A DNA stretch of 64,000 bases from Macrostomum lignano (GCA_002269645.1 NIVC01000195.1:310001-374000), one strand, 5' to 3'. Positions 6,639 through 45,230 are shown, counted from the first letter of the stretch. Numbers and translations: made by a program. The notes: a model not told the origin generated them from the sequence alone.

Positions 6639-6897
6639 GGGCCTTTTCATATTACCAATTCCAGAACCAGAATCGGTTCGGAATTCCAAGAAAAACAGCA
6701 GTATAACTATTAAACTCTGTTAATATTTGACTGCCTTAACAACCTAACTTAGCACAATTTTTCACTTTCTTCTTGGCGATTGTCATTCAATAATAAAAAC
6801 TTTATAGCACGTATTTCCCTCTAGTTATGGAGACAAAAAGTTATACTTCACAAATTGATTCTGGTTCTGGAACAGAGCAAGCAATATGAAAAGGCCC
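6639..6897. mobile_element. MITE, 259 bp, PIF/Harbinger-like ends
   Basis: TIR GGGCCTTTTCATATT / AATATGAAAAGGCCC plus inner inverted block TTCCAGAACCAGAATC / GATTCTGGTTCTGGAA. ATA flanks both ends (3-bp TSD). Confidence 0.7.
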
Positions 6898-7208
6898 ATA
6901 GAGAGCGAGAGAGAGAATCATTAAGATTCGTTTAAAATGGAAAATTTCGCTAATGTCGCCGAAATGGACTGTTTACCGGACTTTTTACTCCGTTATCAGC
7001 ATCTATATTTTAAAACAAATTCTAGCTTGGCCTTTGGGACTTAAAGTTGTCTTTACTAAATAAACTATCTTTACTTATTTATCTATCTCCTTTCTTTTTT
7101 CTTCGTAAGAACTTTGTAATATATAATAAGAACAAATCTAAGAAGCAGTTCTATTATCGCGGTCGATTTAAACTGTATTTACTCCGACTACCGAGCCCGG
7201 TCCTGTAG

Positions 7209-8298
7209 TGAGGTGGGGCGGAGAAAGGTTTATAACAAGAAATTTTTCGAAAGTTGGTCGTTTGAAAAGCTGGGTTTCCTCGAAACCGAACGGCGTTGAG
7301 TTCGCACGAATTGAATCCGGAAAAATCCGTGTGGCCGAATCCCAATAGAATGTCTCGTAGATACTCCGACTGCCGGGGTCCTCAATCCCGGGGGAGGGTA
7401 GTTTAGTCGTAGACGAGCGGTCTTCGTTGGCGCGAGCGTTCAGAACGGGTCCTCAGACACCGAATTTATCGTATCTCGTATGTTTGACTTAACTGGTTAC
7501 TAACAGTAGAGTAGCGCTGCCACCACCGTAATTCGCGTATTACGGAACGTTGGAGTCTCAGAACTTGCTTCGAGATGAGACTGGGTTGTTTTACGCCCCA
7601 CGGGCAAATGACTCAAAATAAGCTAGGCTTCAGGCTATTAATAAAAATTAACGTAAAATCGACTGTTTTATTAGTTCGTAAAAATTCAGGTAGTAAAAGT
7701 ATAAGGGACCGAACCCTACTCCGGCGGATGATTTGCCGGTGCCGCGGTGCACGACTGAATAAAACGGCTTACGCTAGTTGTAGTTAGATTGGGCGAATTA
7801 AATATTAGTTGTTAAATTGAATAGGGAGAGAGAGCGAGGGTGGGCACAAAACTTAAAGAAGAACCTAAACCAAACTAAAAACCAAACTAAACCTAACAAA
7901 ACACAACACACAACTAAAAATTGGGCAGCACTAGGGCACCATTAAATAGAGAAAAGGAGCGCAAAAGATGGACAAATGGGGTCAAACATTGGTGGCAAAA
8001 GGTGGTCACGGGGTCCAAGCATCGAACAAACAAAAAAGACACGGAAAGATAGGGAGTTAAACAAAATTTCCAAAAGAGGGACGCAGAGGACCAGAAAAAG
8101 GAGTGGGAAGACCAACGCAAGAACGGGGAGACTGACGAAATAAGCCAACGACTGGGGGCACAGGGTGGACACAGAGGACCAAAAACTGGGGACAGCGGGA
8201 ATGGGTCAAAAGGTGGTTTAATAAGTCACGTAGAATAAATTTAGAAATTAAAATATTCAAGTTCGCTAAATTGTTAGTGGCAGCCCCCAACTGCCACA
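7209..8298 (-). repeat. 3' LTR of Gypsy-2 (1090 bp)
   Basis: Direct repeat of 16569-17659. Minus-strand termini TGTGG...CCTCA. Confidence 0.97.
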
Positions 8299-31503: not shown

Positions 31504-32432
31504 CTATGAGCAGGTAGGAGTAGCCTATTGTCACTATGAGCAGGTAGTAGTAGCTGATTGTCACTCTATGAGCAGGTAGGAGTAGCCGATTGCCACTCTA
31601 TGAGCAGGTAGGAGTAGCTGATTGTCATTCTATGAGCAGGTAGGAGTAGCCTATTGTCACTATGAGCAGGTAGTAGTAGCTGATTGTCACTCTATGAGCA
31701 GGTAGGAGTAGCCGATTGCCACTCTATGAGCAGGTAGGAGTAGCTGATTGTCATTCTATGAGCAGGTAGGAGTAGCCTATTGTCACTATGAGCAGGTAGT
31801 AGTAGCTGATTGTCACTCTATGAGCAGGTAGGAGTAGCCGATTGCCACTCTATGAGCAGGTAGGAGTAGCTGATTGTCACTCTATGAGCAGGTAGGAGTA
31901 GCTGATTGTCACTCTATGAGCAGGTAGGAGTAGCTGATTGTCACTCTATGAGCAGGTAGGAGTAGCTGATTGTCACTCTATGAGCAGGTAGGAGTAGCTG
32001 ATTGTCACTCTATGAGCAGGTAGGAGTAGCTGATTGTCACTCTATGAGCAGGTAGGAGTAGCCGATTGCCACTCTATGAGCAGGTAGGAGTAGCCGATTG
32101 CCACTCTATGAGCAGGTAGTAGTAGCTGATTGTCACTCTATGAGCAGGTAGGAGTAGCTGATTGTCACTCTATGAGCAGGTAGGAGTAGCTGATTGTCAC
32201 TCTATGAGCAGGTAGGAGTAGCTGATTGTCACTCTATGAGCAGGTAGGAGTAGCTGATTGTCACTCTATGAGCAGGTAGGAGTAGCTGATTGTCACTCTA
32301 TGAGCAGGTAGGAGTAGCTGATTGTCACTCTATGAGCAGGTAGTAGTAGCTGATTGTCACTCTATGAGCAGGTAGGAGTAGCCGATTGCCACTCTATGAG
32401 CCAGTATCAACAGCTGATTTCACACTATGAGC
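31504..32432. repeat. 32-bp minisatellite between CDK5 and TBL3, with a 126-bp higher-order unit at the left end
   Basis: Unit CTATGAGCAGGTAGGAGTAGCTGATTGTCACT. Confidence 0.95.
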
Positions 32433-32492
32433 AGGCAGAGGAGCGGCAACAATACGCAGCCGGCTTTCTATTGCATGCAGCATCAGCCCAGC

Positions 32493-35400
32493 ATGACTTC
32501 AGCATCTTCGCCGCCAGACGAGGTGGAGCTCCGTCAGGTGTCCGAGCTGCGCCCGTTCCACTCGCCGGGGTCGGCGATTCACGCTGGACACGACGGGCGT
32601 CACGTCATCTGCCAGCGCAACACCTCGGACGGCTCCTCGCTGTTCGTGGTGGACACTACAGACTGCGGCATCCGCCGGGAGCTCGTCGGCCAGACGGAGA
32701 AGGTCACGGCAGTCGCGGTGTCGCCGGCGGACTCGGCCGTCTACACGGCCAACAAGGAGCTGCTGCTGCGCCGCTGGGACTGGCAGACTGGCGAGACAGG
32801 CAGCACCTGGCGCAGCTTCCACCGCAGCCCCATCACCCTGCTGGCCGTCAGCGAGGACGGTCGACGGCTGGCCAGTGGCAGCTCGGACGGCGCCGTGCGG
32901 CTGTGGGATCGGGGAAACGGCGACACCCGGCCCTGCAGGGGGCACTCCGGCCTGCTCAGCCTCCTGCGCCTCGCTGCGGGCCAACTGTTCTCAGCTGACG
33001 GGCATGACTATCGGGTGCGCGTTTGGTCCGCCACCTCTGCCGAGCTGGGCGGAGCGCTGGAAGGCCACCAGAGCGCCGTCACCGGACTGTGCCTGATGGA
33101 TGAGGGCCGGGCCGTCACCAGCGGCAGGGATCAGGTGAGGCCGGTTTTGGTATCCTGGATCGGGTGAGGCCGGTTTTGGTATCCTGGATCGGGTGAGGCC
33201 GGTTTTGTGTCTGGGGTCGGATTTCAGGATGTCAGGGATCAGGTGTTAGGGTGTCAGGGATCAGGTGTTAGGGTGTCGGGGATCAGGTGTTAGGGTGTCA
33301 GGGATCAGGTGTTAGGGTGTCAGGGATCAGGTGTTAGGGTGTCAGGAATCAGGTGTTAGGGTGTCTGAGATCAAGTGTTAATTGTCAGGGTTTGGTGTTA
33401 GGGTGTCAGGGATCAGTTTTAGGGTGTCAGGGATAGGTTTAGGGTGTCAGGGATCAGTTTTAGGGTGTCAGGGATAGGATTCTACACCTATTAGATAAGA
33501 TTAGTATGCTAAATTTAAGTAGTCCAAGGTCGCTATTTCTCGCATTTTAGGTGCTAATTGTCTGGCAGCTGAGCAATTATTCTCGCCTAGCAACGGTACC
33601 CACCGACGAGAGTCTGGAGTGCTGCATCCGCGCCCCGGCAGGCCTGGCGGAGTCGCTGGGACTCGGGGCCGTCGCCGGCGGGCTGGTGCTGACTGGCGGC
33701 CAGTCCGGCCGGCTCAAGTTCTGGGACCTCAGCAGCAGCCGGCGCCGCTGCCTGCTGGAGCTCAGCCGCGGCGACGGCGGCCAGAGCGGCGGCGGCGGAG
33801 GCGGTGGGGAGAGCGCGGAGTACTCCCCCGGCAGCGTGCAGTGCGCCCTAACGCTGGGCGACGGCCTGCTGGTCGCCAGGCAGGCGGGCTCCGTGGAGCT
33901 GTACAGTGGCAGCGGCCGCCTCGAGGCCGAGTGGTGCGGCGCCCTCGGCGAGGTCACCTGCGTGCTGGCGGGCCCGCCAATTGGCGATGCCTCGGCTACC
34001 CGGCTGCTGCTGGCCACGGACTCCGGCCCCTTCCTTCGCGTCTTCCTGTGGCGGCCGGGCGACTCCGCTGATTGGCGCTGCCGCTCCCTGCAGCTGCACG
34101 GCGAGCTGGACTCGCTGATCTGCTGCTCGCTGCTGCCCGGCAACCGCCTTCTCACCGCTGCCAAGGGCGGCCGGGTCCGCCTTCACCGCCTCGAGGTCGC
34201 CGGCCAGAGCCTCGCCGGCGTGCGCGCCGTCCACATTGGCGACCTGGAGCCCGGCCACGAGGGTCACGTGACCGCCCTGGCCGCTACTGCCGACGGCAAT
34301 ATGGCCGCCTCCGCCTGCGAGACGCCCGTTATCAAAGCCTTCCGCATCACCGACTCCGGGCCGACCGTGGTTGCCATGGTGACCAGGCCGCACGAGAAGG
34401 CCGTCAACTGCCTGGCGGTGTCGCCTAACGACACCCTGCTGGCCGCAGGCAGCCGGGACAAGTCCGTGTCGCTCTGGTCGCTGCCCAAGCTGCGTCCCAT
34501 CGGGCGGCTCTCCGGCCACAAGCGGGGCGTCTGGAGCGTCAAGTTCAGCCGGCACCAGCAGCTGCTGGCCAGCGTCTCCGCCGACTGCTGTGCCAGAGTT
34601 TGGGACTTGCGCGACCTCAGCTGCCACCGCTGCCTGCAGGGCGACCACCCGCTGTACGACCTCGACTGGCTGGGCTCACAGCACCTTGTCACAGTGGATC
34701 AGGTGCGAGTTTTGGTGCAGCTTGTCGCCAAGCCTGCTTGTGTTTGAATATTCGCCCTGCCACCCGCCTGCATCCCCCTCCGCCCCTGCCACCTCCGCTC
34801 CTTTCACCACCTCTGCATCCACCTCCGCTCCTTTCACCACCTCTGCATCTACCTCCGCCCCTGTCACCACCTCTGCATCCACCTCCGCCCCTGTCACCAC
34901 CTCTGCATCCACCTCCGCCCCTGTCACCACCTCTGCATCCGCCTCCGCCCCTGTCACCACCTCTGCATCCACCTCCGCCCCGGTCACCACCTCTGCATCC
35001 GCCTCCGCCCCTGTCACCACCTCTGCATCCACCTCCGCCCCTGCCACCTCCGCTCCTTTCACCACCTCTGCATCCACCTCCGCTCCTTTCACCACCTCTG
35101 CATCTACCTCCGCCCCTGTCACCACCTCTGCATCCACCTCCGCCCCTGTCACCACCTCTGCATCCACCTCCGCCCCTGTCACCACCTCTGCATCCGCCTC
35201 CGCCCCTGTCACCACCTCTGCATCCACCTCCGCCCCTGTCACCACCTCTGCATCCGCCTCCGCCCCTGTCACCACCTCTGCATCCACCTCCGCCCCTGCC
35301 ACCTCCGCTCCTTTCACCACCTCTGCATCCACCTCCGCCCCTGTCACCACCTCTGCATCCGCCTCCGCCCCTGTCACCACCTCTGCATCCACCTCCGCCC

Positions 35401-36360
35401 CTGCCACCTCCGCTCCTTTCACCACCTCTGCATCCACCTCCGCCCCTGTCACCACCTCTGCATCCACCTCCGCCCCTGCCACCTCCGCTCCTTTCACCAC
35501 CTCTGCATCCGCCTCCGCCCCTGTCACCACCTCTGCATCCACCTCCGCCCCTGTCACCTCCGCCCCTGTCACCACGCTCTGCATCCGCCTCCGCCCCTGT
35601 CACCTCCGCCCCTGTCACCACGCTCTGCATCCGCCTCCGCCCCTGTCACCTCCGCCCCTGTCACCTCGGCCACTGCCAACCCGCCCCGCAGTCCGGCCTT
35701 GTTCGCGTCTGGTCGGTGCGGGACCGCGCCCCGGTGGCCACCCGGGAGGGCCACAACGGCCGCGCCTGGTGCATCGCCTCGCTGGGAGACGCCGCCCCGG
35801 CCGCTGACGCCACCGACGAAGGCACCAGCGGCTCTGGCGGCCACTGGCTCACCGGCGGTGAGGACGGCCGGCTGCTGCTTTGGCGAGATGCCACCGCCGA
35901 GGCCGTTGCCGAGCGCGCTGAAGCCCGCGCTGACGCTTTGGCGCGCGAGCAGCGCCTTCAGAATCTGCTTGGTTCCGGCCGCCTCGCCGAGGCCCTCGCC
36001 CTGGCGCTGAGCCTTGCCCAGCCATCGCGGGCGCGCGGCATCGTCGCCGACTTGGTGGCGGCCTCCGGCTGCGGCCGCCTGGACCCGCAGCTCGTGCGCG
36101 GCCTGGACGAGCCGCTGCAGCAGCGCCTGCTGGAGTTCAGCGCCGGCTGGAATTCGAACTCGCGCACCTGCCACGAGGCGCAGTGCGCCCTGCACGCCCT
36201 CCTGCTAGTGCGGACGCCACAGCAGCTGCTGGCCTGGCCCTCCGTGCGGCGCCACCTGCCCGCCCTCCTCGCTTTCACCGAGCGGCACGAAAGGCGGGCG
36301 CAGCAGCTGGCAGCGTGTCGGCACCTGATCCGCCTGCTGGCTGCCGACCCCGCTGCCTGA
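32493..36360 (+). CDS. TBL3: Transducin beta-like protein 3 / UTP13 (WD40 repeats + Utp13 domain); exons 32493-33134, 33551-34702, 35692-36360
   Basis: Multiple WD40 repeats (HEKAVNCLAVSPND.LLAAGSRDKSVSLW; GHKRGVWSVKFS). Utp13-like C-terminus (WNSNSRTCHEAQ, FTERH). Phase-0 GT-AG joins give a continuous ORF. An in-frame ATG at 32475 is an alternative start. Confidence 0.93.
33124..33478. repeat. Donor-derived arrays in TBL3 intron 1 (30-bp, then 22-bp units)
   Basis: GGATC(A/G)GGTGAGGCCGGTTTTGGTATCCT x3, then GTCAGGGATCAGGTGTTAGGGT. Confidence 0.88.
34775..35665. repeat. 30-bp C-rich minisatellite in TBL3 intron 2
   Basis: Unit CCACCTCCGCCCCTGTCACCACCTCTGCAT. Confidence 0.95.
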
Positions 36361-36554
36361 GAATGCCACTACCTGTGCCTGCTTGCTTTTATCATGAGTT
36401 GCGACCCTGCGAATGAAATAAACTGCATTTTTGACCCGATTTGAATTCATTCGGGCGCGAATTCTGGTTCAATTTTGGCCAAGTCTTTTGTTTGTTCTGC
36501 AGATAGCTTAGGGCTCTTAGTCTGGCTCAGGCCTCCGCTGTTCCGGATCCTACC

Positions 36555-37160
36555 GGGATCTCAGCAGTATCTCACATCATCCTGTAGGATACCTGTCCCA
36601 CTCACCTGGGATCTCAGCAGTATCTCACATCATCCTGTAGGATACCTGTCCCACTCACCTGGGATCTCAGCAGTATCTCACATCATCCTGTAGGATACCT
36701 GTCCCACTCACCTGGGATCTCAGCAGTATCTCACATCATCCTGTAGGATACCTGTCCCACTCACCTGGGATCTCAGCAGTATCTCACATCATCCTGTAGG
36801 ATACCTGTCCCACTCACCTGGGATCTCAGCAGTATCTCACATCATCCTGTAGGATACCTGTCCCACCCACCTGGGATCTCAGCAGTATCTCACAGCTTCA
36901 TCCTGTAGGATACCTGTCCCACCCACCTGGGATCTCAGCAGTATCTCACATCATCCTGTAGGATACCTGTCCCACTCACCTGGGATCTCAGCAGTATCTC
37001 ACATCATCCTGTAGGATACCTGTCCCACCCACCTGGGATCTCAGCAGTATCTCACAGCTTCATCCTGTAGGATACCTGTCCCACCCACCTGGGATCTCAG
37101 CAGTATCTCACATCATCCTGTAGGATACCTGTCCCACTCACCTGGGATCTCAGCAGTATC
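36555..37160. repeat. 53-bp minisatellite between TBL3 and MED27, ~11 copies
   Basis: Unit GGGATCTCAGCAGTATCTCACATCATCCTGTAGGATACCTGTCCCACTCACCT; some units are 56 bp. Confidence 0.95.
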
Positions 37161-37242
37161 TTGAATCCCATGTAGCACATTCTGAGTCCCAAGCATTAGC
37201 ATCAGAACCCCACTGTGTCGCAATCTGTGCGCCATCCCGCAG

Positions 37243-38389
37243 GAGAGCCTGAGCCACCTGTCCATCCAGAGCCTGCTGCACGTGCGCGAGCTTCGCGGCG
37301 AGCTGCTGCAGCTGCACCAGCCGGCCAGCGACGGCTCCGGGTCGTCCGGCTTCGAGCAGCTGGCCGCCACCGCCCGCAAGCTGGCCGAGAGCGTGCAGAG
37401 CCTGGACCAGCTGGCCGAGAAGATGGCGCTGGTTGCCAGGCAGCAGTACCAGCAGGCGGTCCCGCCCGACCAGCTCAGTTTGTACCCCAACATCCTGCTG
37501 GCTGACGCCGACCCGGAGCGGCACGCCGCCACAACCCAGGCGTTGTTCGGCGAACGCTGGCGCGCCGACGTCTGCGGCCTGGTGCGCGACGGCCTGGCCA
37601 CCCGCGCCCTCCTGCACGCCCGCGCCGCGCCCCGGCCGCCGCCGCTGCCGCCGCCTCCGCCGCCGCCTCCCGGTCGGGTGGAGGGCGCCAGAGTGAGTTG
37701 GCCACGCAGTCGCAGCAGATGCGGAACTTCCTGGAGCGGGAGCTGAGCCGCAGCTACCGGACCCAGTGCGAACGGCACCACCGCGACTCGGACCGCCAGC
37801 TCAGCGTCTCCGTGGAGCCCGCGTCGCCCTGCACCAATCTGGCCGTCGTCACCACCGACTGCTTCCACGTGCTGCTGTTCACAAGGGGCCTGGTTATTGA
37901 GATGGCTCAGGTGAGGCTTTGATCCTCTTTTGAGTTTTCCCATCCATCCCGCTCCCCTGGCTCAGGTGAGACTTTGATCCCCTGTTGAGTTTTCCCATTC
38001 ATCCCGCCCCCCCCCCTGGCTCCGTATTTGTGCTCAGCTGTATACCTGCAATATAATTTCGGGTTCTCCCCTGCCCGCAGGTGCTGGGCCTCGGCGAGCC
38101 GCTGCCCCGGCCCAACCAGGCCTGGCCGAGCTCCCATTTTCGCTGTTTCCGCCAGCTGACGGCCGGCCTGCTGCAGCTGCTGGTGGCCGGCAGGCAGAGC
38201 GGCGGCGGCACCAGCCTGCTGCAGCTGCTCATCAAGTGGCTCTGCGCCTTTCGCAACCTATTCATGCAGCGCTGCGCCCGCTGCGACCGCATCCTGCGGG
38301 ACCAGCTGCCGCCCACCTGGTTCGATTTTCGCAAGGACGACCGGCCAGTCTATCACCTGGCCTGCAAGAGTGCCGTGTGCGCCGCCTGA
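37243..38389 (+). CDS. MED27: Mediator complex subunit 27; exons 37243-37910 (frame break at ~37690) and 38081-38389; start codon not found in cis
   Basis: C-terminus KWL..F..LF...CARC..ILRDQLPPTW.DFR......H..C and WPSSHFRCFRQLT match the MED27 pattern. The N-terminal helices are also alignable by eye. Confidence 0.85.
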
Positions 38390-38439
38390 TTCCAGCGCTT
38401 CTGGCTTGCATTTTAAAGTGTACATTTTGTCTGGTCTAA

Positions 38440-38810
38440 GGGGATTCCCCTGTTCCATACCAACGGGATTTCCCACGTTCTATAGCGACAGGATTTCCCA
38501 CGTTCCGTAGCAACGGGAGATTCCCACGTTCCATAGCAACGGGATTTCCCACGTTCTATAGCGACAGGATTTCCCACGTTCCGTAGCAACGGGAGATTCC
38601 CACGTTCCATAGCAACGGGATTTCCCACGTTCTATAGCGACAAGATTTCCCACGTTCCGTAGCAACGGGAGATTCCCACGTTCCATAGCAACGGGATTTT
38701 CCACGTTCTATAGCGACAGGATTTCCCACGTTCCGTAGCAACCGGAGATTCCCACGTTCCATAGCAACGGGATTTCCCACGTTCTATAGCGACAGGATTT
38801 CCCATGTTTT
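38440..38810. repeat. ~25-bp minisatellite organised as a 76-bp trimer
   Basis: GGATTTCCCACGTTC(T/C)ATAGC... monomers; the period of 76 is visible in the ORF track. Confidence 0.9.
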
Positions 38811-39181
38811 ATAAAAGCGGATTCCCCTGTTCCCTAACAGTAAAATGTCCTGTTTCATAGCAAATGGTATTCCCCATTCTCATCATTTGATTCCCCTTAT
38901 TCCATAGCAAAGGTGATGCGCATCTCGCTTATCTTCAATTATTTAAAAGCTTTGACCTGCCTGCTTCTACGTGAATGAGTTCTATTTGACTGTCGGCGGA
39001 ATTCCTAAATGTATGCCATTTTGCTGTTGTGCATTCGCGTTTGTGTTGCATTTGCTACTTAAATACATCAGAGAGCGGCCTCTGCGGGCTGCGAAGTTCT
39101 GCGGCTTTTTTATTGAAAATTCAAAAAAAAAGATTTTTGTTTTGAGTCTTTACATGTACCTGCTGCAGGCCAGCTGTGGCA

Positions 39182-39432
39182 CCGGGGATTCCCGACTGGC
39201 AATCCCTGCCGCTGGCCACGGGGGATTCCCCTGACTGGAACTCCCTGCCGCTGGTCACCGAGGATTCCCCTGACTGGCAATCCCTGCCGCTGGCCACCGG
39301 GGAATCCCCTGACTGGCAATCCCTGTCGCTGGCCACCGGGGCTCCCCTGACTGGCAATCCCTGTCGCTGGCCACCGGGGCTCCCCTGACTGGCAATCCCT
39401 GTCGCTGGCCACCGGGGATTCCCCTGACTGGC
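39182..39432. repeat. 39-bp minisatellite, ~6 copies
   Basis: Unit GGGGATTCCCCTGACTGGCAATCCCTGCCGCTGGCCACC. Confidence 0.9.
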
Positions 39433-39791
39433 ACGGGATTTCCCCGATGATTTCAACCAACAAAGCAGAATTCAAGTGCAGCCAGTTTATCGAGTTGAAG
39501 GTCCCGCATGCGCTGGCGATAAACTCAAAGTCCATCGTGGATTCGTAGTGGCTTCAATTGCCAGTGGAAAACCGGTGAACAGAGTGGAAAATGGCTGGGG
39601 TGCTCCAGCTGCTCAGGCGGCTTTTTTTCCGAGTGGAAAATGCCAGATAGCATCAAAGGCTGACTGGAGCGAACCGGCTCCACACAATGGCGGCAGTGCC
39701 CGGGGTGGCGCGCAGCTGGGATGCTTTTATTTGACCGCTGGCTGCAGCTCGCGTGTGACCCAGAGCTTCGCTGAGTGCTCGCCTGTCAGTG

Positions 39792-42700
39792 ATGGAGAAG
39801 ATTCTCAGCCAGGGTGGCCAGTTTGGCCGCTTCCACTGGCGGGTGTGCAGCCTGCCGCTGCTGGTGTCCTTCATGTCCGCCTTCCACACCATGGCGCCGA
39901 TATATGTGCTCTACGACCCGCCGCACAGGTGAGCCGCTACTGAGCACTGGCTGTGCTCAAACTGCATGCATAATTAGGCGCTAACACCTGCTGCTTATGC
40001 AACTCAAGAACTATATTTGAGATTGGTAGGATTCTATGTTGCTTTAACATCTTACTTCAATTCCATGTCCTGTGACTAAAAATCATTAAAATTACACAGT
40101 TTGACTCCCTCCCTCACTTTATGAATCTTTTTATCGCGCTTTGTACACAGGGCATTACGTAGGATAAAAATTTATCATAGAAGTCCTTGGTGCAGCTGTG
40201 TAAATGGACTGCTCTATGCACAAGGCAACTTTAATCCTTTCAACTGCTCGTGGGGAGCATGCACTCTGAGAACGCTCTGAAGGTCAAAATCAGTTAATTC
40301 ATTCGTGACGGGCCGTCACGCAGTTTTCAACTAGTTGGATGAGGCGCACTGCAGCAACAGGTGGCGGCGTGAAGCTGTGCTGAGCGCGTAGGTGCAGCGA
40401 AACCCCTTGAATTTCCTTTCAACATCCATTGCCTACCTTCACATCCATCCGGGGAATTCCCTCCAGCTCAAAGACGCAAAACTAAGCGGCGCGGTGGAGG
40501 GTGGGGCCGGGGGCTGCCAGCCGGTCGCGGCACAATGCCCAGCTGCAGAGAGCAAAACTTTTCCTGCCATTTGAGTAGTTCGGGCTCTGAGTACTTATTA
40601 TGCTACGCCACTGAGCTTACAGTTTCATTTCTCTGTGGCAGAAAGGCTGGCTGGAGTTTGAGTTGTTCTCTGTCGAGGAAAGTGCAGACAGACTCCTGCA
40701 ATTCTGTGTAGATTGGCCGGGGAGCAGGTCATTTCGCCACCGTGTCTACAGACGCAAAAATGACTGAATCAAACTGGTTTGTGATCTCTACACCCACACA
40801 CCCACACTGCTTTTAGTAGTAGAGCGCATCAAAATTCGGTTTTTATTTTAATCTATAATATATTTGCTCATAAGATTGATCCACAAGTTGAAGCATCAAT
40901 TACAACAGAGTCAAGTTGCCGATATGTTTTGTGAACTTAATATGGCTGAATCGAACCAATGCTAGCTGGGGCTCTCAAGTTAATTTCGGATGTAATTAAG
41001 TTACTGTACATGCCACATCTAGAGCATTAGGGCGAAAGACAAACAGAGGAGCACTTGCTCAGAGACGGATTGTGACGGCAGTTTGGGATGCTAATATGAA
41101 ACTCAACTGAGATTATGAGCCTCGTAAGCCTCACAGTACTTCCTACAACTGCTCACGACTGAGTGCTCACCGCAGGGCTCACCGATAAGTGCTCACTGAT
41201 GAGTGCTCACTGATGAGTGCTCACTGATGAGTGCTCACAGCAGACTCTGCAACTCTGTGATCCTTTCCCGCATCCCAGGTGCCGCCTGCCCGAGGATTCC
41301 GGCTGGCACGCCAACGACAGCCTGCTGGCGCAGAGCTCCAAGCACAACGCCAGCATCCTGCAGTTCCAGCCGGAGCTGGACGCAAACGACACGAACCTGC
41401 GACGACATCGCTGCTTCATCCAAGTCAACGACAGCCTCCAGGCCTGCTCAGACTGGGTCTTCGACACGGAAGAGTTCGACAGCACGCTGGTCACCGAGGT
41501 GAGTCCGGCAGAGGCCTGCACCAGTTCTGCACTGGAGTTGATCTCTTAAGGAAAATCCATTATACTGAAAATTTATATTTAAAAGCAAAAAGCAATCCCC
41601 TGAAAGCCAGCTGTTTACGAACTAGCCTAAGATATCAAATCCCCTTTGAGCTTTGGATCAACACCATGAGCCACAGCATTTCAGCTATTCCCCATGAGCC
41701 TTGACATCTCAAGAATTCTCCCATGAGCTACAGCGTTTCATCTATTCCCTAGGGCCTTAAAATCACAGCATTTTCTCACGTGAGCCTTGACAACTCAAGC
41801 CTTTGAGCAGTCTTGTTTCACCTTCTTGCTGCCCTGAATCCCTGCAGCTCGGCCTTGTCTGCCGGAAGCGCCACTGGGCAACCGTCATCTCAACCTGCAG
41901 CTTCGCCGGCATCCTGGTGGGAATCGTGCTGTCTGGTTTCTTGGCTGACTGGTGAGACCTGACCCCTGAGACTGAGACCTGACCCCTGAGACTGAGACCT
42001 GACCCTTGAGACTGAGACCTGACCCTTAAGACTGACACCTGACCCTTGAGACTGACACCTGACCCCCGAGACTAACACCTGACCCTTGAGACTGAAACCT
42101 GACCCTTGAGACTGACAACTGACCCTTGAGACTGACAACTGACCCCTGAGACTGACACCTGACCCTTGAGACTGAGACCTGACCCCTGAGACTGAGACCT
42201 GACCCCTGAGACTGAGACCTGACCCTTGAGACTGAGACCTGACCCCTGAGACTGAGACCTGACCCTTGAGACTGAAACCTGACCCCTGAGACTGAGACCT
42301 GACCCTTGAGACTGAGACCTGACCCCTGAGACTGAGACCTGACCCTTGAGACTGAAACCTGACCCCTGAGACTGAGACCTGACCCCTGAGACTGAGACAT
42401 GACCCCTGAGACTGAGACCTGACCCCTGAGACTGAGACCTGACCCTTGAGACTGAAACCTGACCCCTGAGACTGAGACCTGACCCTTGAGACTGAGACAT
42501 GACCCCTGAGACTGACACCTGACCCCTGAGACTGAGACCTGACCCTTGAGACTGACACCTGAAGCCTCACGGACGCATGATCAGTTCTTTTGCTCAGAGG
42601 TGAAAGCAGCATCACTCGGCGCGGCTCCAAAACCCGTCCAACGCAAACCGAACCCTCCTGACCACCTGGCAGGCTGGGCAGGCGGGTCAGCCTCATCGTC

Positions 42701-45230
42701 ACCATTTGGGTGCTGGTCGCGGCGCAGCTGGCCGGCCTGTTCGCCGTCTCCGTCACCTTCACCGCCGCCGTCCGCTTCCTGATCGGCCTGGGCGCGCTGT
42801 CATCGTACTCGGTGGCGTACGTCATGATCTTCGAGTTCGTTGGACCGAAGGCGCGGCACCATGTGGCTGCGGTGTTCGGCTACAGCTGGTCACTCGGCAC
42901 CGCGGCGGTCGCGCTGATGGCCTACCTGACCAGGTGACTGTCCTGTCATTGCTAGTTGGTGACCCCTGCTGGCCAGGTGACTGTCCTGCCATTGCTTGTT
43001 GGTGACCCCTGCTGACCAGGTGACTGTCCTGCCATTGCTTGTTGGTGACCCCTGCTGACCAGGTGACTGTCCTGTCATTGCTTGTTGGTGACCCCTGCTG
43101 ACCAGGTGACTGTCCTGCCATTGCCAGTTGGTGACCCCTGCTGACCAGGTGACTGTCCTATCATTGCTTGTTGGTGACCCCTGCTGACCCAGTGACCCAT
43201 AAACCGTTGATCAAAAACCCGCTGCTCCCTCGGCTCCACAGGTCCTGGCGCAACTATGCCATCGCCTCGCTAGTGCCGACCTTAGCGGTGCTGCTGCTGG
43301 TGCACCTGCCCTTCATGGCGCCGGAGACTCCGCGCTGGCTGCTGTCGCGCGGCCGGAAACGCGCCGCCGGCCGCATCGTCCGCCAGATGCTGCTGGACAA
43401 CGGGCGAACCGACGAGCAGGCCAACGCCGCCGTCAAGGAGCTGCTCGGCGACAGTGGTGACGGAAAAACGACGGCGTCGGACGGTCGGCACTCGATGCGG
43501 CGGTCGCTGGGGCTGCTGGCCAGGAGCCCCCGGCTGCTGCTGCGGTACGGCATCGTCTGCTTCGACTGGTGAGGCCCAGCGAGGTCCCTCAATGGGGCCA
43601 AACGTGGCCTACGATTGGGAGTTTTGGTGCCCTGGTGTCAGACAAGGACTACCAGCAGTTACCGCTGTACACCGGTACCTGAACTGTAGATGGCGGCCTC
43701 TCTCCACAAGGAGTTCATATCCGACAGTTAGTCTTCGCAGTTTCAGATTCTCATCTAGTACTGGACTTACCGTTGTATAACAGCAACTTCTAGTGGTCCT
43801 TGGTTTCCGAATGCGGGTAGAACAGGTCTGAAGGTTGCCTGATGGCAGCTCTGGTTCAGTCTAAAATATTGCAGGTTAGGTTGCAGGTTGCAGGTTGCAG
43901 GTTGTAGGTTGCAGGTTGCAGGTTGCAGGTTGCAGGTTGCAGGTTTCAGGTTGCAGGTTGCAGGTTGCAGGTTGCAGGTTGCAGGTTTCAGGTTGCAGGT
44001 TGCAGGTTGCAGGTTGCAGGTTGCAGGTTTCAGGTTGCAGGTTGCAGGTTGCAGGTTGCAAGTTGTAGGTTGCAGGTTGCAGGTTTCAGGTTGCAGGTTG
44101 CAGGTTGCAGGTTGCAGGTTGCAGGTTGCAGGTGTAAGCTGACGAAAAACCGCATGAAGTGATGCAGGAATCCGCTTGCCCAATCCCTGGAAGAATCCAG
44201 GACCAATGACCCTGAATGCGCTGCCTGTAACTTTCTCCCAGGTTCCTGGTTGTAGCTGTGTACTTCGGAATCTCAATGGGCGCCAAGAACCTGCCAGGCA
44301 GCATCTTCGTGACCTCCTGCCTTATCGGCATCGTGGATTTGCCGTCCTACCTGATCATGCACCTGGCTGCGGGCCGCCTGGGCCGCAAGACCACCTTCAT
44401 CGGGGCGGCCAGCGGCTCCGGCCTGGCGCTGCTCGGCCTGGCAGCTGCCAGCCACCTGCTTAGAGGTGAGGCTTGCGTGAACTGCTGCTGAGGCCCCTGA
44501 TGCAGTTCAGGACTGCCGCCACTTTGACTGGCTAGAATGCGAACTGGCATTTCAGATCTCACCTGGCTGATCATCGCGCTGTCCCTGCTGGGCAAGATGC
44601 TCAACTCCACCGCCTTCGCCATCATCTACATCTGGACCGGGGAGCTGTACGCCACCAACATGCGCAGCTCCGGCCTGTCCACCAGCTCCATGTGCGCCCG
44701 GTTCGGCACTCTGTTCGCTCCGCTGCTCGGCAATATTGTGAGTTCATGCCCCACTTGCACTACTACTCGCTGTCAGTTGTCAGTAGTCTGTTGCGACTGT
44801 CGCAAATCGTAAACATGTTTGGCAATCCGCCGCCCTCAGCGCGACTTCATCCCGGGCGAGTTCGGGCCGCTCGTCTCCTACGCGGTGTTCGCCGGCAGCT
44901 CCTTCCTGGCCGCCGCGATTTCCTTCGCCGTGCCGGAGACCCGGGGCGTCGACATCCCCGACTCGGTTGAGGACCTCATCAACAAAGTCAGGTGCGAGCG
45001 TAATGCGTTGCTCACCGAGAACTGTTGCTCGCTTGGGCATTCGAAGCCGTCTTTAATGCCAATGGTTTTATATCCCCGCATATCCCCGCATATCCCCGTA
45101 TATCCCCGCATATCCCCGCATATCCCCGCATATCCCCGCATATCCCCGCAGTCCGAAAACGGACGAGATCAGGATGGCGGAGGCCGCTAGCCGGCACCTA
45201 CTGGCGAAGGCCAAGGCGGAGGAGGCCTGA
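39792..45230 (+). CDS. SLC22-like organic cation/anion MFS transporter, copy 1; exons 39792-39928, 41279-41498, 41848-41951, 42673-42933, 43242-43568, 44242-44465, 44556-44737, 44840-44991, 45152-45230
   Basis: GQFGRF N-terminus, large Cys/N-glycan loop ending STLVTE|LGLVC, ADW|LGRR, PETPRWL, ELYATNMRSSG, PETRG..IPD. All nine exons join in phase. Confidence 0.92.
41953..42562. repeat. 20-bp minisatellite in SLC22-1 intron 3
   Basis: Unit GAGACTGAGACCTGACCCCT, starting directly at the donor. Confidence 0.95.
42926..43190. repeat. 43-bp array in SLC22-1 intron 4 that includes the exon end and donor
   Basis: Unit GACCAG|GTGACTGTCCTGCCATTGCTTGTTGGTGACCCCTGCT. Confidence 0.93.
43872..44132. repeat. 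7-bp satellite (GCAGGTT)n in SLC22-1 intron 5
   Basis: Direct reading. Confidence 0.95.
45070..45151. repeat. 10-bp array (TATCCCCGCA)n ending in the acceptor of SLC22-1 exon 9
   Basis: Last unit is TATCCCCGCAG|. Confidence 0.92.

What the first reader, a model, noticed from the sequence alone, without database searches (positions are those of the whole stretch)
37200..37290. MED27 may obtain its start codon from the trans-spliced leader
The coding region opens at an acceptor (CCATCCCGCAG|GAG AGC CTG, 37242/37243) in phase 0, and ESLSHLSIQSLLHVREL aligns by eye with the first helix of MED27. The frame upstream has stops and no ATG. The few ATGs between the TBL3 stop and this point lead quickly to stops and have no convincing donor. 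The first in-frame ATG is ~60 codons downstream. Flatworm spliced leaders end in AUG, which is known to be usable as the initiator, and SL joining here yields M-E-S-L exactly. A second strong acceptor at 36502 would give only AUG-ATA-GCT-TAG.
Basis: partly seen in the sequence, partly recalled or inferred. Interest (0 to 1): 0.7.

Follow-up and report, generated by a model that had tools for sequence, protein, structure and literature searches.

The report
Flatworm MED27 start from spliced leader
In this Macrostomum lignano window the MED27 reading frame opens at a splice acceptor with no ATG of its own, so its start codon most likely comes from the AUG that ends the trans-spliced leader, a mechanism already known in flatworms.

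Summary
The window is Macrostomum lignano assembly Mlig_3_7, NIVC01000195.1:310001-374000. A phase-0 acceptor (cccgcag|GAGAGC, 37242/37243) opens the MED27 frame. An in-frame TGA lies 19 codons upstream, and the first genomic in-frame ATG is codon 61 (37423). Codons 1-60 are clearly coding: GC3 is 0.98 and GC2 is 0.42, while the flanks show no periodicity. They align to the conserved N-terminal helix of animal MED27. The M. lignano spliced leader ends in ATG. In two paralogous loci GenBank annotates a 325-aa "partial" MED27 whose CDS starts exactly at this acceptor. That annotation came from a pipeline that cuts transcripts at spliced-leader read peaks, so this is indirect RNA evidence. I saw no leader-containing read or peptide directly.

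From the acceptor it reads only 167 codons before a TGA, and GenBank annotates only a 166-aa C-terminal piece. This is either a decaying paralog or an assembly error.

Use of the leader AUG as initiator is established in flatworms (Cheng et al. 2006). This is an ordinary new example of a known mechanism.

The parts
36358..36360 (+). Stop codon (TGA) of the upstream same-strand gene TBL3/Utp13, whose annotated CDS spans 32481-36360
36417..36422 (+). AATAAA poly(A) signal of TBL3
36486..36502 (+). Strong pyrimidine-rich acceptor tttgtttgttctgcag| that fits the published trans-splice motif [T/C]TNCAG. A leader ATG joined here reads only M-I-A-stop.
   Evidence: Conserved in both paralogs.
36555..37161 (+). 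53-bp tandem repeat, 11.3 copies, filling most of the TBL3-MED27 spacer (outron)
   Evidence: The repeat variants differ in the paralogs.
37183..37185 (+). In-frame TGA that closes the MED27 frame 19 codons upstream of the acceptor
37226..37242 (+). Acceptor ctgtgcgccatcccgcag|, the proposed spliced-leader addition site. It is identical in all three genomic copies.
37243..37422 (+). MED27 codons 1-60 (ESLSH...LAEK). They contain no ATG in any frame. GC3 is 0.98. They encode helix 1 and most of helix 2.
37423..37425 (+). First genomic in-frame ATG (codon 61; context gagaagATGg). In the model it lies inside helix 2.
37625..37626 (+). C-run that is one base shorter than in paralogs L001 and L002 (CC versus CCC). 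This shifts the window's reading frame.
37744..37746 (+). TGA that ends the frame opened at 37243 in the window copy (167 genomic codons)
37719..37721 (+). ATG at which GenBank starts the 166-aa CDS of this copy (PAA88352.1, Mlig032149g4)
37243..37910 (+). MED27 exon 1. In the paralogs it is 669 nt, or 223 codons.
37911..38080 (+). MED27 intron (GTGAGG...cccgcag). It contains a 55-bp tandem duplication of the donor region.
38081..38389 (+). MED27 exon 2 with the Pfam Med27 domain and the Cys/His motif. The stop TGA is at 38387-38389.

Best explanation
MED27 of Macrostomum lignano has no initiation codon of its own.

- Inferred: the gene is transcribed as an outron-bearing pre-mRNA, probably as the downstream gene of a TBL3-MED27 operon.
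- Indirectly supported: the 35-44 nt spliced leader, which ends in ...UUGCAUG, is trans-spliced onto the acceptor at 37242/37243.
- Follows from the sequence: the terminal AUG of the leader then sits directly in front of GAG-AGC-CUG, in phase. It is the first AUG on the mRNA.
- Inferred: that AUG starts translation of a 326-residue MED27 (M plus 325 genomic codons).

In the copy held in this window the same start would give only a 168-residue product, because of a 1-base shorter C-run at 37625-37626. Two paralogous loci are intact.
For: 1. Organism and leader. The window is identical to NIVC01000195.1 of M. lignano Mlig_3_7. The published leader sequences end in ATG.

2. The frame opens at the acceptor. 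A TGA lies 19 codons upstream and there is no usable upstream ATG or donor.

3. Codons 1-60 are coding. GC3 is 0.98 and GC2 is 0.42, against roughly 0.5 at all three positions in the flanks. The single difference from the paralogs in these 180 nt is synonymous, and the whole CDS is about 99.4% identical, while the flanking DNA is 93-96% identical.

4. These codons encode the conserved MED27 N-terminus. The alignment with 21 animal MED27 proteins places ESLSHLSIQSLLHVRELR on the first helix, and homologue Met1 residues lie 0-20 positions before it. phmmer aligns query residues 11-318 to residues 10-300 of an aphid MED27. hhalign gives P = 0.025 at the collinear position. The AlphaFold model has helices at 2-29 and 38-70, with genomic Met61 inside helix 2. 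Foldseek aligns about 320 columns to human MED27 chains at E about 1e-11.

5. GenBank proteins PAA82563.1 and PAA84467.1 (325 aa, 'partial') start at ESLSH. Their CDS starts at cccgcag|GAGAGC in loci L001 and L002. A 5'-partial ORF starting at the first exon base means the transcript model begins at the acceptor. The annotation pipeline (TBONE plus TransDecoder) cuts transcript 5' ends at peaks of leader-containing reads, after trimming off the leader and with it the ATG.

6. The leader AUG is a documented initiator in flatworms (Cheng et al. 2006, cited).
Against: - I did not see a leader-containing read, a cDNA or a peptide. The RNA evidence is read off an annotation.
- The acceptor CCGCAG fits the published trans-splice motif [T/C]TNCAG less well than the upstream acceptor at 36502, CTGCAG.
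- The leader AUG has U at -3 (UUGCAUGG), whereas the genomic Met61 has a strong context (GAGAAGAUGG). Some leaky scanning to Met61 is therefore plausible.
- Sequence similarity of the N-terminus to other MED27 proteins is weak on its own: phmmer against PDB aligns only residues 197-318, and the hhalign probability is low.
- In this window's copy the frame is broken downstream.
Confidence: 0.75

Rival explanations
1. Translation starts at the first genomic ATG (37423, codon 61), and the 180 nt after the acceptor are 5' UTR. This could happen on mRNAs trans-spliced at 36503, or through leaky scanning past the leader AUG.
For: - Met61 has a strong context, A at -3 and G at +4, while the leader AUG has U at -3.
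- There is no other ATG between 37243 and 37423, so scanning ribosomes that skip the leader AUG would arrive there.
- The acceptor at 36502 fits the trans-splice motif better and lies about 80 nt after the TBL3 AATAAA.
Against: - GC3 of 0.98 with clear codon periodicity in codons 1-60 is not what a UTR looks like.
- The conserved N-terminal MED27 helix would be lost, and Met61 lies in the middle of predicted helix 2.
- The product would be about 265 aa, against roughly 300-345 aa for most full-length animal MED27 proteins found.
- The GenBank models of the intact paralogs start at the acceptor, not at 36503.
- As a minor co-product this is not excluded.
Confidence: 0.12
2. An upstream cis-spliced exon supplies the ATG. 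This includes a TBL3-MED27 read-through fusion like the older UniProt model A0A1I8FAL8.
For: P0002, an ab initio model on the older ML2 assembly, joins a GT inside the last TBL3 exon to the acceptor catcag|AACCCC (37205/37206). It reads in frame through TPLC(G/R)NLCAIPQ into ESLSH. That stretch is open in the window as well.
Against: - The implied donor (gc|GTGTCG) is poor compared with the species consensus GT[G/A]AG.
- The RNA-seq-guided Mlig_3_7 annotation keeps TBL3 (824 aa, with its own stop) and MED27 as separate genes.
- The intergenic ATGs have no usable in-phase donor.
- A CDS that included an upstream exon would not be annotated as starting at the acceptor.
Confidence: 0.05
3. For the copy in this window the question of the start codon is moot, because this copy is a recently inactivated paralog. 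The frameshift at 37625-37626 is real, and functional MED27 comes from the other loci.
For: - The window has one C fewer than both L001 and L002.
- From the acceptor the frame ends after 167 codons, before the Med27 domain.
- GenBank calls only a 166-aa C-terminal ORF here.
- M. lignano is a hidden polyploid with redundant gene copies (PMC10468722 abstract).
Against: - Apart from this base the CDS differs from the paralogs at only 5 positions, 4 of them synonymous, so there is no further decay.
- The indel lies in a G+C-rich C-run inside a (CGC)n tract. My own expectation, not tested here, is that long-read assemblies often miscount bases in such runs.
- This rival concerns only this copy. It does not conflict with the leader-AUG mechanism.
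Confidence: 0.4
4. A non-AUG start, for example CUG at codon 3 or 6, is used on a transcript that is not trans-spliced.
For: CTG codons lie at 37249 and 37258. The frame has no AUG.
Against: There is no evidence for a promoter or a capped 5' end in the repeat-filled spacer. The annotated transcript start coincides with an AG acceptor. An AUG is supplied without any extra assumption by a mechanism known to operate in about 30-39% of this species' genes.
Confidence: 0.03

Closest known systems
[quoted passage not shown]
   Same: - The leader ends in AUG.
- The acceptor is in phase with the main ORF.
- The conserved N-terminal coding sequence lies upstream of the first genomic AUG, so the leader AUG is required for the full-length protein.
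- In Schistosoma mansoni the AUG is in frame in 28% of trans-spliced mRNAs, and more than 40 cDNAs need it.
   Different: The species is a free-living macrostomorph, not a parasitic fluke. I found no paper that analyses leader-AUG use in M. lignano; its trans-splicing study mentions AUG only in general terms. Here neither translation nor the leader junction was observed directly.
M. lignano spliced-leader trans-splicing and operons (Wudarski et al. 2017, PMC5730564; Ustyantsev and Berezikov 2021, PMC8629364)
   Same: - A conserved housekeeping gene lies on the same strand as its upstream neighbour.
- The spacer is 882 nt, of which 607 nt are tandem repeat, so the repeat-adjusted distance is under 1 kb. 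This meets those authors' operon criterion.
- They report that repeats commonly inflate spacers inside operons.
   Different: The acceptor used (CCGCAG) departs from the top motif [T/C]TNCAG at one position. A better-fitting acceptor at 36502 lies closer to the TBL3 poly(A) signal, and its use is unknown.
Mediator subunit MED27 (Pfam PF11571; human MED27 in PDB 7EMF and 7LBM)
   Same: - The C-terminal Med27 domain matches (E = 2.3e-13).
- The C-x2-C ... H-x2-C columns are invariant (C288, C291, H315, C318).
- The full-length fold matches human MED27.
- The length is similar: 326 aa against 311 aa.
   Different: The protein is very G+C-biased. It has an Ala/Ser/Gly-rich linker (a Pro-rich reading in the shifted window frame), and only about 18-30% identity to other animal MED27 proteins.

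Membership tests
Spliced-leader-AUG-initiated ORF (flatworm slORF, Cheng et al. 2006) | The species' spliced leader ends in AUG | tested here: met
   The published M. lignano leader is CGGTCTCTTACTGCGAAGACTCAATTTATTGCATG, or the 44-nt form ending the same way. There is no leader RNA gene in the window itself.
Spliced-leader-AUG-initiated ORF (flatworm slORF, Cheng et al. 2006) | The mRNA is trans-spliced at the acceptor in question | tested here: inconclusive
   The support is indirect but specific. The GenBank 5'-partial CDS of two paralogs starts at the first base after cccgcag|, and the pipeline sets 5' ends at leader-read peaks. No read was seen. The protein databases hold no transcript-derived copy.
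Spliced-leader-AUG-initiated ORF (flatworm slORF, Cheng et al. 2006) | The leader AUG is in frame with the main ORF, with no intervening stop | tested here: met
   ATG plus GAG AGC CTG... reads MESLSH... in the frame with GC3 of 0.98. The ORF is 326 codons in the intact paralogs.
Spliced-leader-AUG-initiated ORF (flatworm slORF, Cheng et al. 2006) | The genomic sequence offers no AUG for the conserved N-terminus | tested here: met
   There is an in-frame TGA at 37183-37185 and no ATG before 37423. The upstream ATGs are dead ends. The conserved helix 1 is encoded before Met61.
Spliced-leader-AUG-initiated ORF (flatworm slORF, Cheng et al. 2006) | Ribosomes actually initiate at the leader AUG | not testable with these tools
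   This needs ribosome profiling, N-terminal proteomics or reporter constructs.
MED27 (Pfam PF11571) | C-terminal Med27 domain with conserved Cys/His residues | tested here: met
   Pfam gives 50.7 bits against a cut-off of 25. Human MED27 chains match at E about 1e-8. The C, C, H and C columns are invariant.
MED27 (Pfam PF11571) | N-terminal long helices followed by an alpha/beta domain, as in human MED27 within Mediator | tested here: met
   The AlphaFold model has helices at 2-29, 38-70, 91-128 and 149-179, followed by strands (mean pLDDT 70.8). Foldseek top hits are MED27 chains over about 320 columns.
Downstream gene of an M. lignano operon (criterion of PMC8629364) | Same strand as the upstream gene, repeat-adjusted spacer under 1 kb, and a trans-spliced downstream gene | tested here: inconclusive
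   The strand and spacer criteria are met: 882 nt in total, 607 nt of it repeat. Trans-splicing is only indirectly supported, and a polycistronic precursor was not observed.

The most novel reading that the evidence does not exclude
An essential, deeply conserved Mediator subunit in an early-branching flatworm has lost its own start codon and depends entirely on spliced-leader trans-splicing for translation of its N-terminal helices. If so, obligatory use of the leader AUG would date back to the base of the flatworms. It would also mean that many M. lignano GenBank proteins flagged 'partial' are complete once the leader ATG is added. TBL3 next door, whose CDS also starts at an acceptor in frame with the leader ATG, is a candidate example.
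Probability: 0.7. Interest if true: 0.3.

Novelty: new member of a known kind. Interest (0 to 1): 0.2.

Why it matters
This finding matters mainly for annotation.

- Pipelines that trim the spliced leader before calling ORFs discard the real start codon. Complete proteins are then labelled as 5'-partial, or a downstream Met is chosen. MED27 in M. lignano is a clean example of the first outcome.
- Anyone designing transgenes, knock-ins or N-terminal tags for such genes in this model flatworm needs to know that the start codon is not in the genome.
- It adds a free-living, early-branching species to a mechanism shown experimentally in schistosomes.
- It does not reveal a new mechanism.

Tried and rejected
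- A second protein-database search with the N-terminal 129 aa, meant to pull out transcript-derived ORFs that start MESLSH, found nothing. It did not even recover the known UniProt fusion model, so this negative is uninformative.
- An exact look-up of window ORF 37282-37746 found nothing on record.
- Searches for the gene identifier or for MED27 in papers and held supplements gave nothing. Wasik et al. 2015 is not held.
- I looked for a tiny intron to explain the frame change near 37694-37709. No GT...AG pair there gives the right phase, and the paralogs show the cause is a 1-base difference in a C-run.
- There is no leader RNA gene in the window, no Rfam family anywhere in it, and no unusual RNA structure around the acceptor (z = 0.83).
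- The long antisense ORFs over exon 1 (276 and 155 aa) and the +2-frame ORF have no Pfam match. I take them, by inference, to be by-products of the high G+C content.
[quoted passage not shown] However, it is not conserved in paralog L002, and such near-matches occur at the chance rate. I reject it as meaningful.

Full report
**Identity of the window.** A protein built from the reading frames after the acceptor hits only Macrostomum lignano entries. The GenBank protein PAA88352.1 (166 aa) maps to contig NIVC01000195.1 of assembly GCA_002269645.1 (Mlig_3_7). The fetched locus L003 is identical to window 31719-44389. The window is therefore NIVC01000195.1:310001-374000 of a free-living flatworm. 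About 30-39% of this species' genes are trans-spliced to a single spliced leader.

**The observation.**
- The sequence reads ...ctgtgcgccatcccgcag|GAGAGCCTGAGCCAC, with the AG at 37241-37242.
- The frame starting at 37243 gives ESLSHLSIQSLLHVRELRGELLQLHQ....
- In that frame a TGA lies at 37183-37185, and there is no ATG between it and the acceptor.
- The first in-frame ATG is at 37423 (codon 61). No ATG occurs in any frame between 37243 and 37423.
- The 882-nt spacer after the TBL3/Utp13 stop (36358-36360) contains four ATGs. Three lie in the TBL3 3' UTR at or before its AATAAA. The fourth (37170) is followed at once by TAG. The only in-phase GT before a stop is a poor one at 36375.
- The acceptor at 36502/36503 (tttgtttgttctgcag|ATAGCTTAG) exists. 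A leader ATG joined there would read M-I-A-stop.

**Are codons 1-60 coding?** Composition by codon position changes sharply at the acceptor.

| Region | GC position 1 | GC position 2 | GC position 3 |
|---|---|---|---|
| 37243-37422 (codons 1-60) | 0.75 | 0.42 | 0.98 |
| Intergenic region | 0.49 | 0.52 | 0.51 |
| Intron | 0.49 | 0.58 | 0.57 |

The later parts of the CDS have GC3 of 0.90-0.93. Against two paralogous loci, these 180 nt differ at one position, which is synonymous. The whole CDS is about 99.4% identical to the paralogs, while the flanking DNA is 93-96% identical.

**Do they encode the MED27 N-terminus?**
- Pfam and PDB sequence searches detect only the C-terminal domain (PF11571, E = 2.3e-13; human MED27 residues 187-309).
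- A full HMMER scan of 1.8 billion representative proteins found 43 more distant MED27 relatives. One, an aphid MED27, aligns from query residue 11 to its own residue 10.
- In a 22-sequence alignment, ESLSHL--SIQSLLHVRELRGELLQL...SDG lies over the consensus first helix (AL.....LR..V..VF..L.DG). Lingula MED27 reads SLLAVRTLRSSVNQVF...NG at that position. The homologues' Met1 residues sit 0-20 positions upstream.
- A profile comparison of the N-terminal 129 aa against the homologues alone is weak (P = 0.025) but falls at the collinear place.
- An AlphaFold model built from that alignment (mean pLDDT 70.8) has helices at 2-29 and 38-70. Genomic Met61 lies inside the second helix.
- Foldseek's best hits are human and mouse MED27 chains from Mediator cryo-EM structures, aligned over about 320 of 325 residues at E about 1e-11.

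A start at Met61 would therefore delete helix 1 and most of helix 2.

**Where the AUG can come from.** The published M. lignano leader is CGGTCTCTTACTGCGAAGACTCAATTTATTGCATG, with a 44-nt form that ends the same way. Joining it at 37243 gives ...UUGCAUG|GAGAGCCUG, which reads M-E-S-L. All flatworm leaders described end in AUG. Cheng et al. (2006) showed in Schistosoma mansoni that this AUG serves as initiator, that it is in frame in 28% of trans-spliced mRNAs, and that more than 40 cDNAs require it (as summarised in PMC9851317, and PMC12582326).

**Indirect RNA evidence.**
- The 90%-identity cluster of the best hit contains PAA82563.1 and PAA84467.1, named "hypothetical protein BOX15_Mlig032149g6, partial". 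This 325-aa protein begins ESLSHLSIQ.
- Its two loci (L001 on NIVC01000462.1 and L002 on NIVC01000373.1) carry the CDS start at the first base after cccgcag|.
- Because an in-frame stop lies 19 codons upstream, a 5'-partial ORF can begin at that base only if the transcript model itself begins there.
- The Mlig_3_7 annotation set the 5' ends of trans-spliced mRNAs at peaks of reads that carried the leader, after trimming it. It then called ORFs with TransDecoder (PMC5730564).
- Trimming removes the ATG, which explains the "partial" flag.
- This also argues against leader addition only at 36503. In that case the model would start there, and the ORF would have been called from Met61.
- The step from the annotation to actual reads is my inference. 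I could not inspect the reads.

**Operon context.** TBL3 and MED27 are on the same strand. After the TBL3 AATAAA (36417-36422), the spacer up to 37243 is mostly a 53-bp tandem repeat of 11.3 copies (36555-37161). Ustyantsev and Berezikov report that repeats inflate spacers inside operons. They class gene pairs with a repeat-adjusted distance under 1 kb and a trans-spliced downstream gene as operons. This pair fits that criterion. The spacer architecture and both acceptors are conserved in the three genomic copies.

- In the window the frame opened at 37243 ends at TGA 37744-37746. The Med27 domain is in the +2 frame.
- Alignment with L001 and L002 shows a single missing C in the run at 37625-37626, inside a (CGC)n tract.
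- With that base present, the paralogs read 223 codons in exon 1 (to the GTGAGG donor at 37911) and 102 codons in exon 2 (38081-38389), for 325 in total.
- GenBank therefore annotates only a 166-aa ORF from ATG 37719 for this copy.
- The other five CDS differences are four synonymous and one Ala/Thr. The frameshift is therefore either very recent or an assembly error, and I cannot tell which.

**Rivals.**
- A start at Met61 is possible as a minor product, because that ATG has the better context. As the only start it is contradicted by the coding signature and by the conserved helices.
- A cis-spliced ATG exon, or a TBL3-MED27 fusion as in the older ab initio UniProt model A0A1I8FAL8, needs a poor donor. 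It is not what the RNA-guided annotation shows.
- A non-AUG start is not needed to explain the data.

**Comparison with known systems and verdict.** This works like the leader-AUG-initiated ORFs of schistosomes. It meets every sequence-level criterion of that class. The trans-splice junction is supported only indirectly, and translation was not tested. I found no paper that treats leader-AUG use in M. lignano. This is a new member of a known kind, useful mainly as a correction to annotation. Confidence in the mechanism is about 0.75 and interest about 0.2.

Noticed in passing
window 37625-37626 (and 37744-37746): The window's MED27 copy has CC where two paralogs have CCC. The frame from the acceptor therefore stops after 167 codons, and GenBank annotates only a 166-aa C-terminal ORF (PAA88352.1). 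This is either a real, recent frameshift or an assembly error.
   Followed up: partly
window 32468-32495: The annotated TBL3/Utp13 CDS (824 aa) also begins directly at an acceptor (ctattgcatgcag|CATCAGCCCAGCATGACT). The leader ATG would be in frame there too, giving M-HQPS-M..., and a genomic ATG follows 4 codons later. [quoted passage not shown] It is not conserved in paralog L002 (tattttatg), and such near-matches occur at the chance rate.
   Followed up: partly
window 36555-37161: A 53-bp tandem repeat array (11.3 copies, 97% matching) fills the TBL3-MED27 spacer. The paralogs carry different unit variants (53 versus 56 bp units), some with ATG-TAG. This fits the published remark that repeats inflate spacers inside M. 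lignano operons.
   Followed up: partly
window 37903-38012; L001 about 6660-7250: The MED27 intron begins with a 55-bp tandem duplication that includes the last 7 exon bases and the GTGAG donor (2 copies here, 4 in L002, 10 in L001). This creates a row of identical candidate donor sites. Using a later copy would shift the frame.
   Followed up: no
window 38441-38808 and 39180-39433: Two further tandem arrays lie downstream of the MED27 stop, one of 25/76-bp units and one of 39-bp units. No AATAAA or ATTAAA occurs between the stop (38389) and the next gene (39771), so the MED27 poly(A) signal is not canonical or not obvious.
   Followed up: no
window 39771 onward: The next same-strand gene, an MFS/sugar transporter of 570 aa, is also annotated as starting without an ATG (LSARLSVMEK...). 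Its CDS start is not at an AG acceptor (agcttcg|CTGAGT). A 'partial' start on its own is therefore not evidence of trans-splicing.
   Followed up: no
window 34789-35650: A 30/60/255-bp tandem repeat inside the TBL3 gene reads as a long proline-rich ORF (PPLHPPPPLS...) continuous with the last TBL3 exon in the mechanical ORF list. It is probably intronic, because the 824-aa CDS spans 3880 nt. I did not check this.
   Followed up: no
window 36300-37243 (UniProt A0A1I8FAL8 = P0002): The older ML2-based UniProt entry fuses the TBL3 C-terminus to MED27 through the acceptor at 37205/37206. It also contains several frame-shifted stretches. It is probably a gene-prediction artefact, caused by MED27 lacking its own ATG.
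   Followed up: partly
window 37113-37943, minus strand: A 276-aa ATG-initiated antisense ORF covers MED27 exon 1. It has no Pfam match, and I take it to be a by-product of the very high GC3 of the sense strand.
   Followed up: yes
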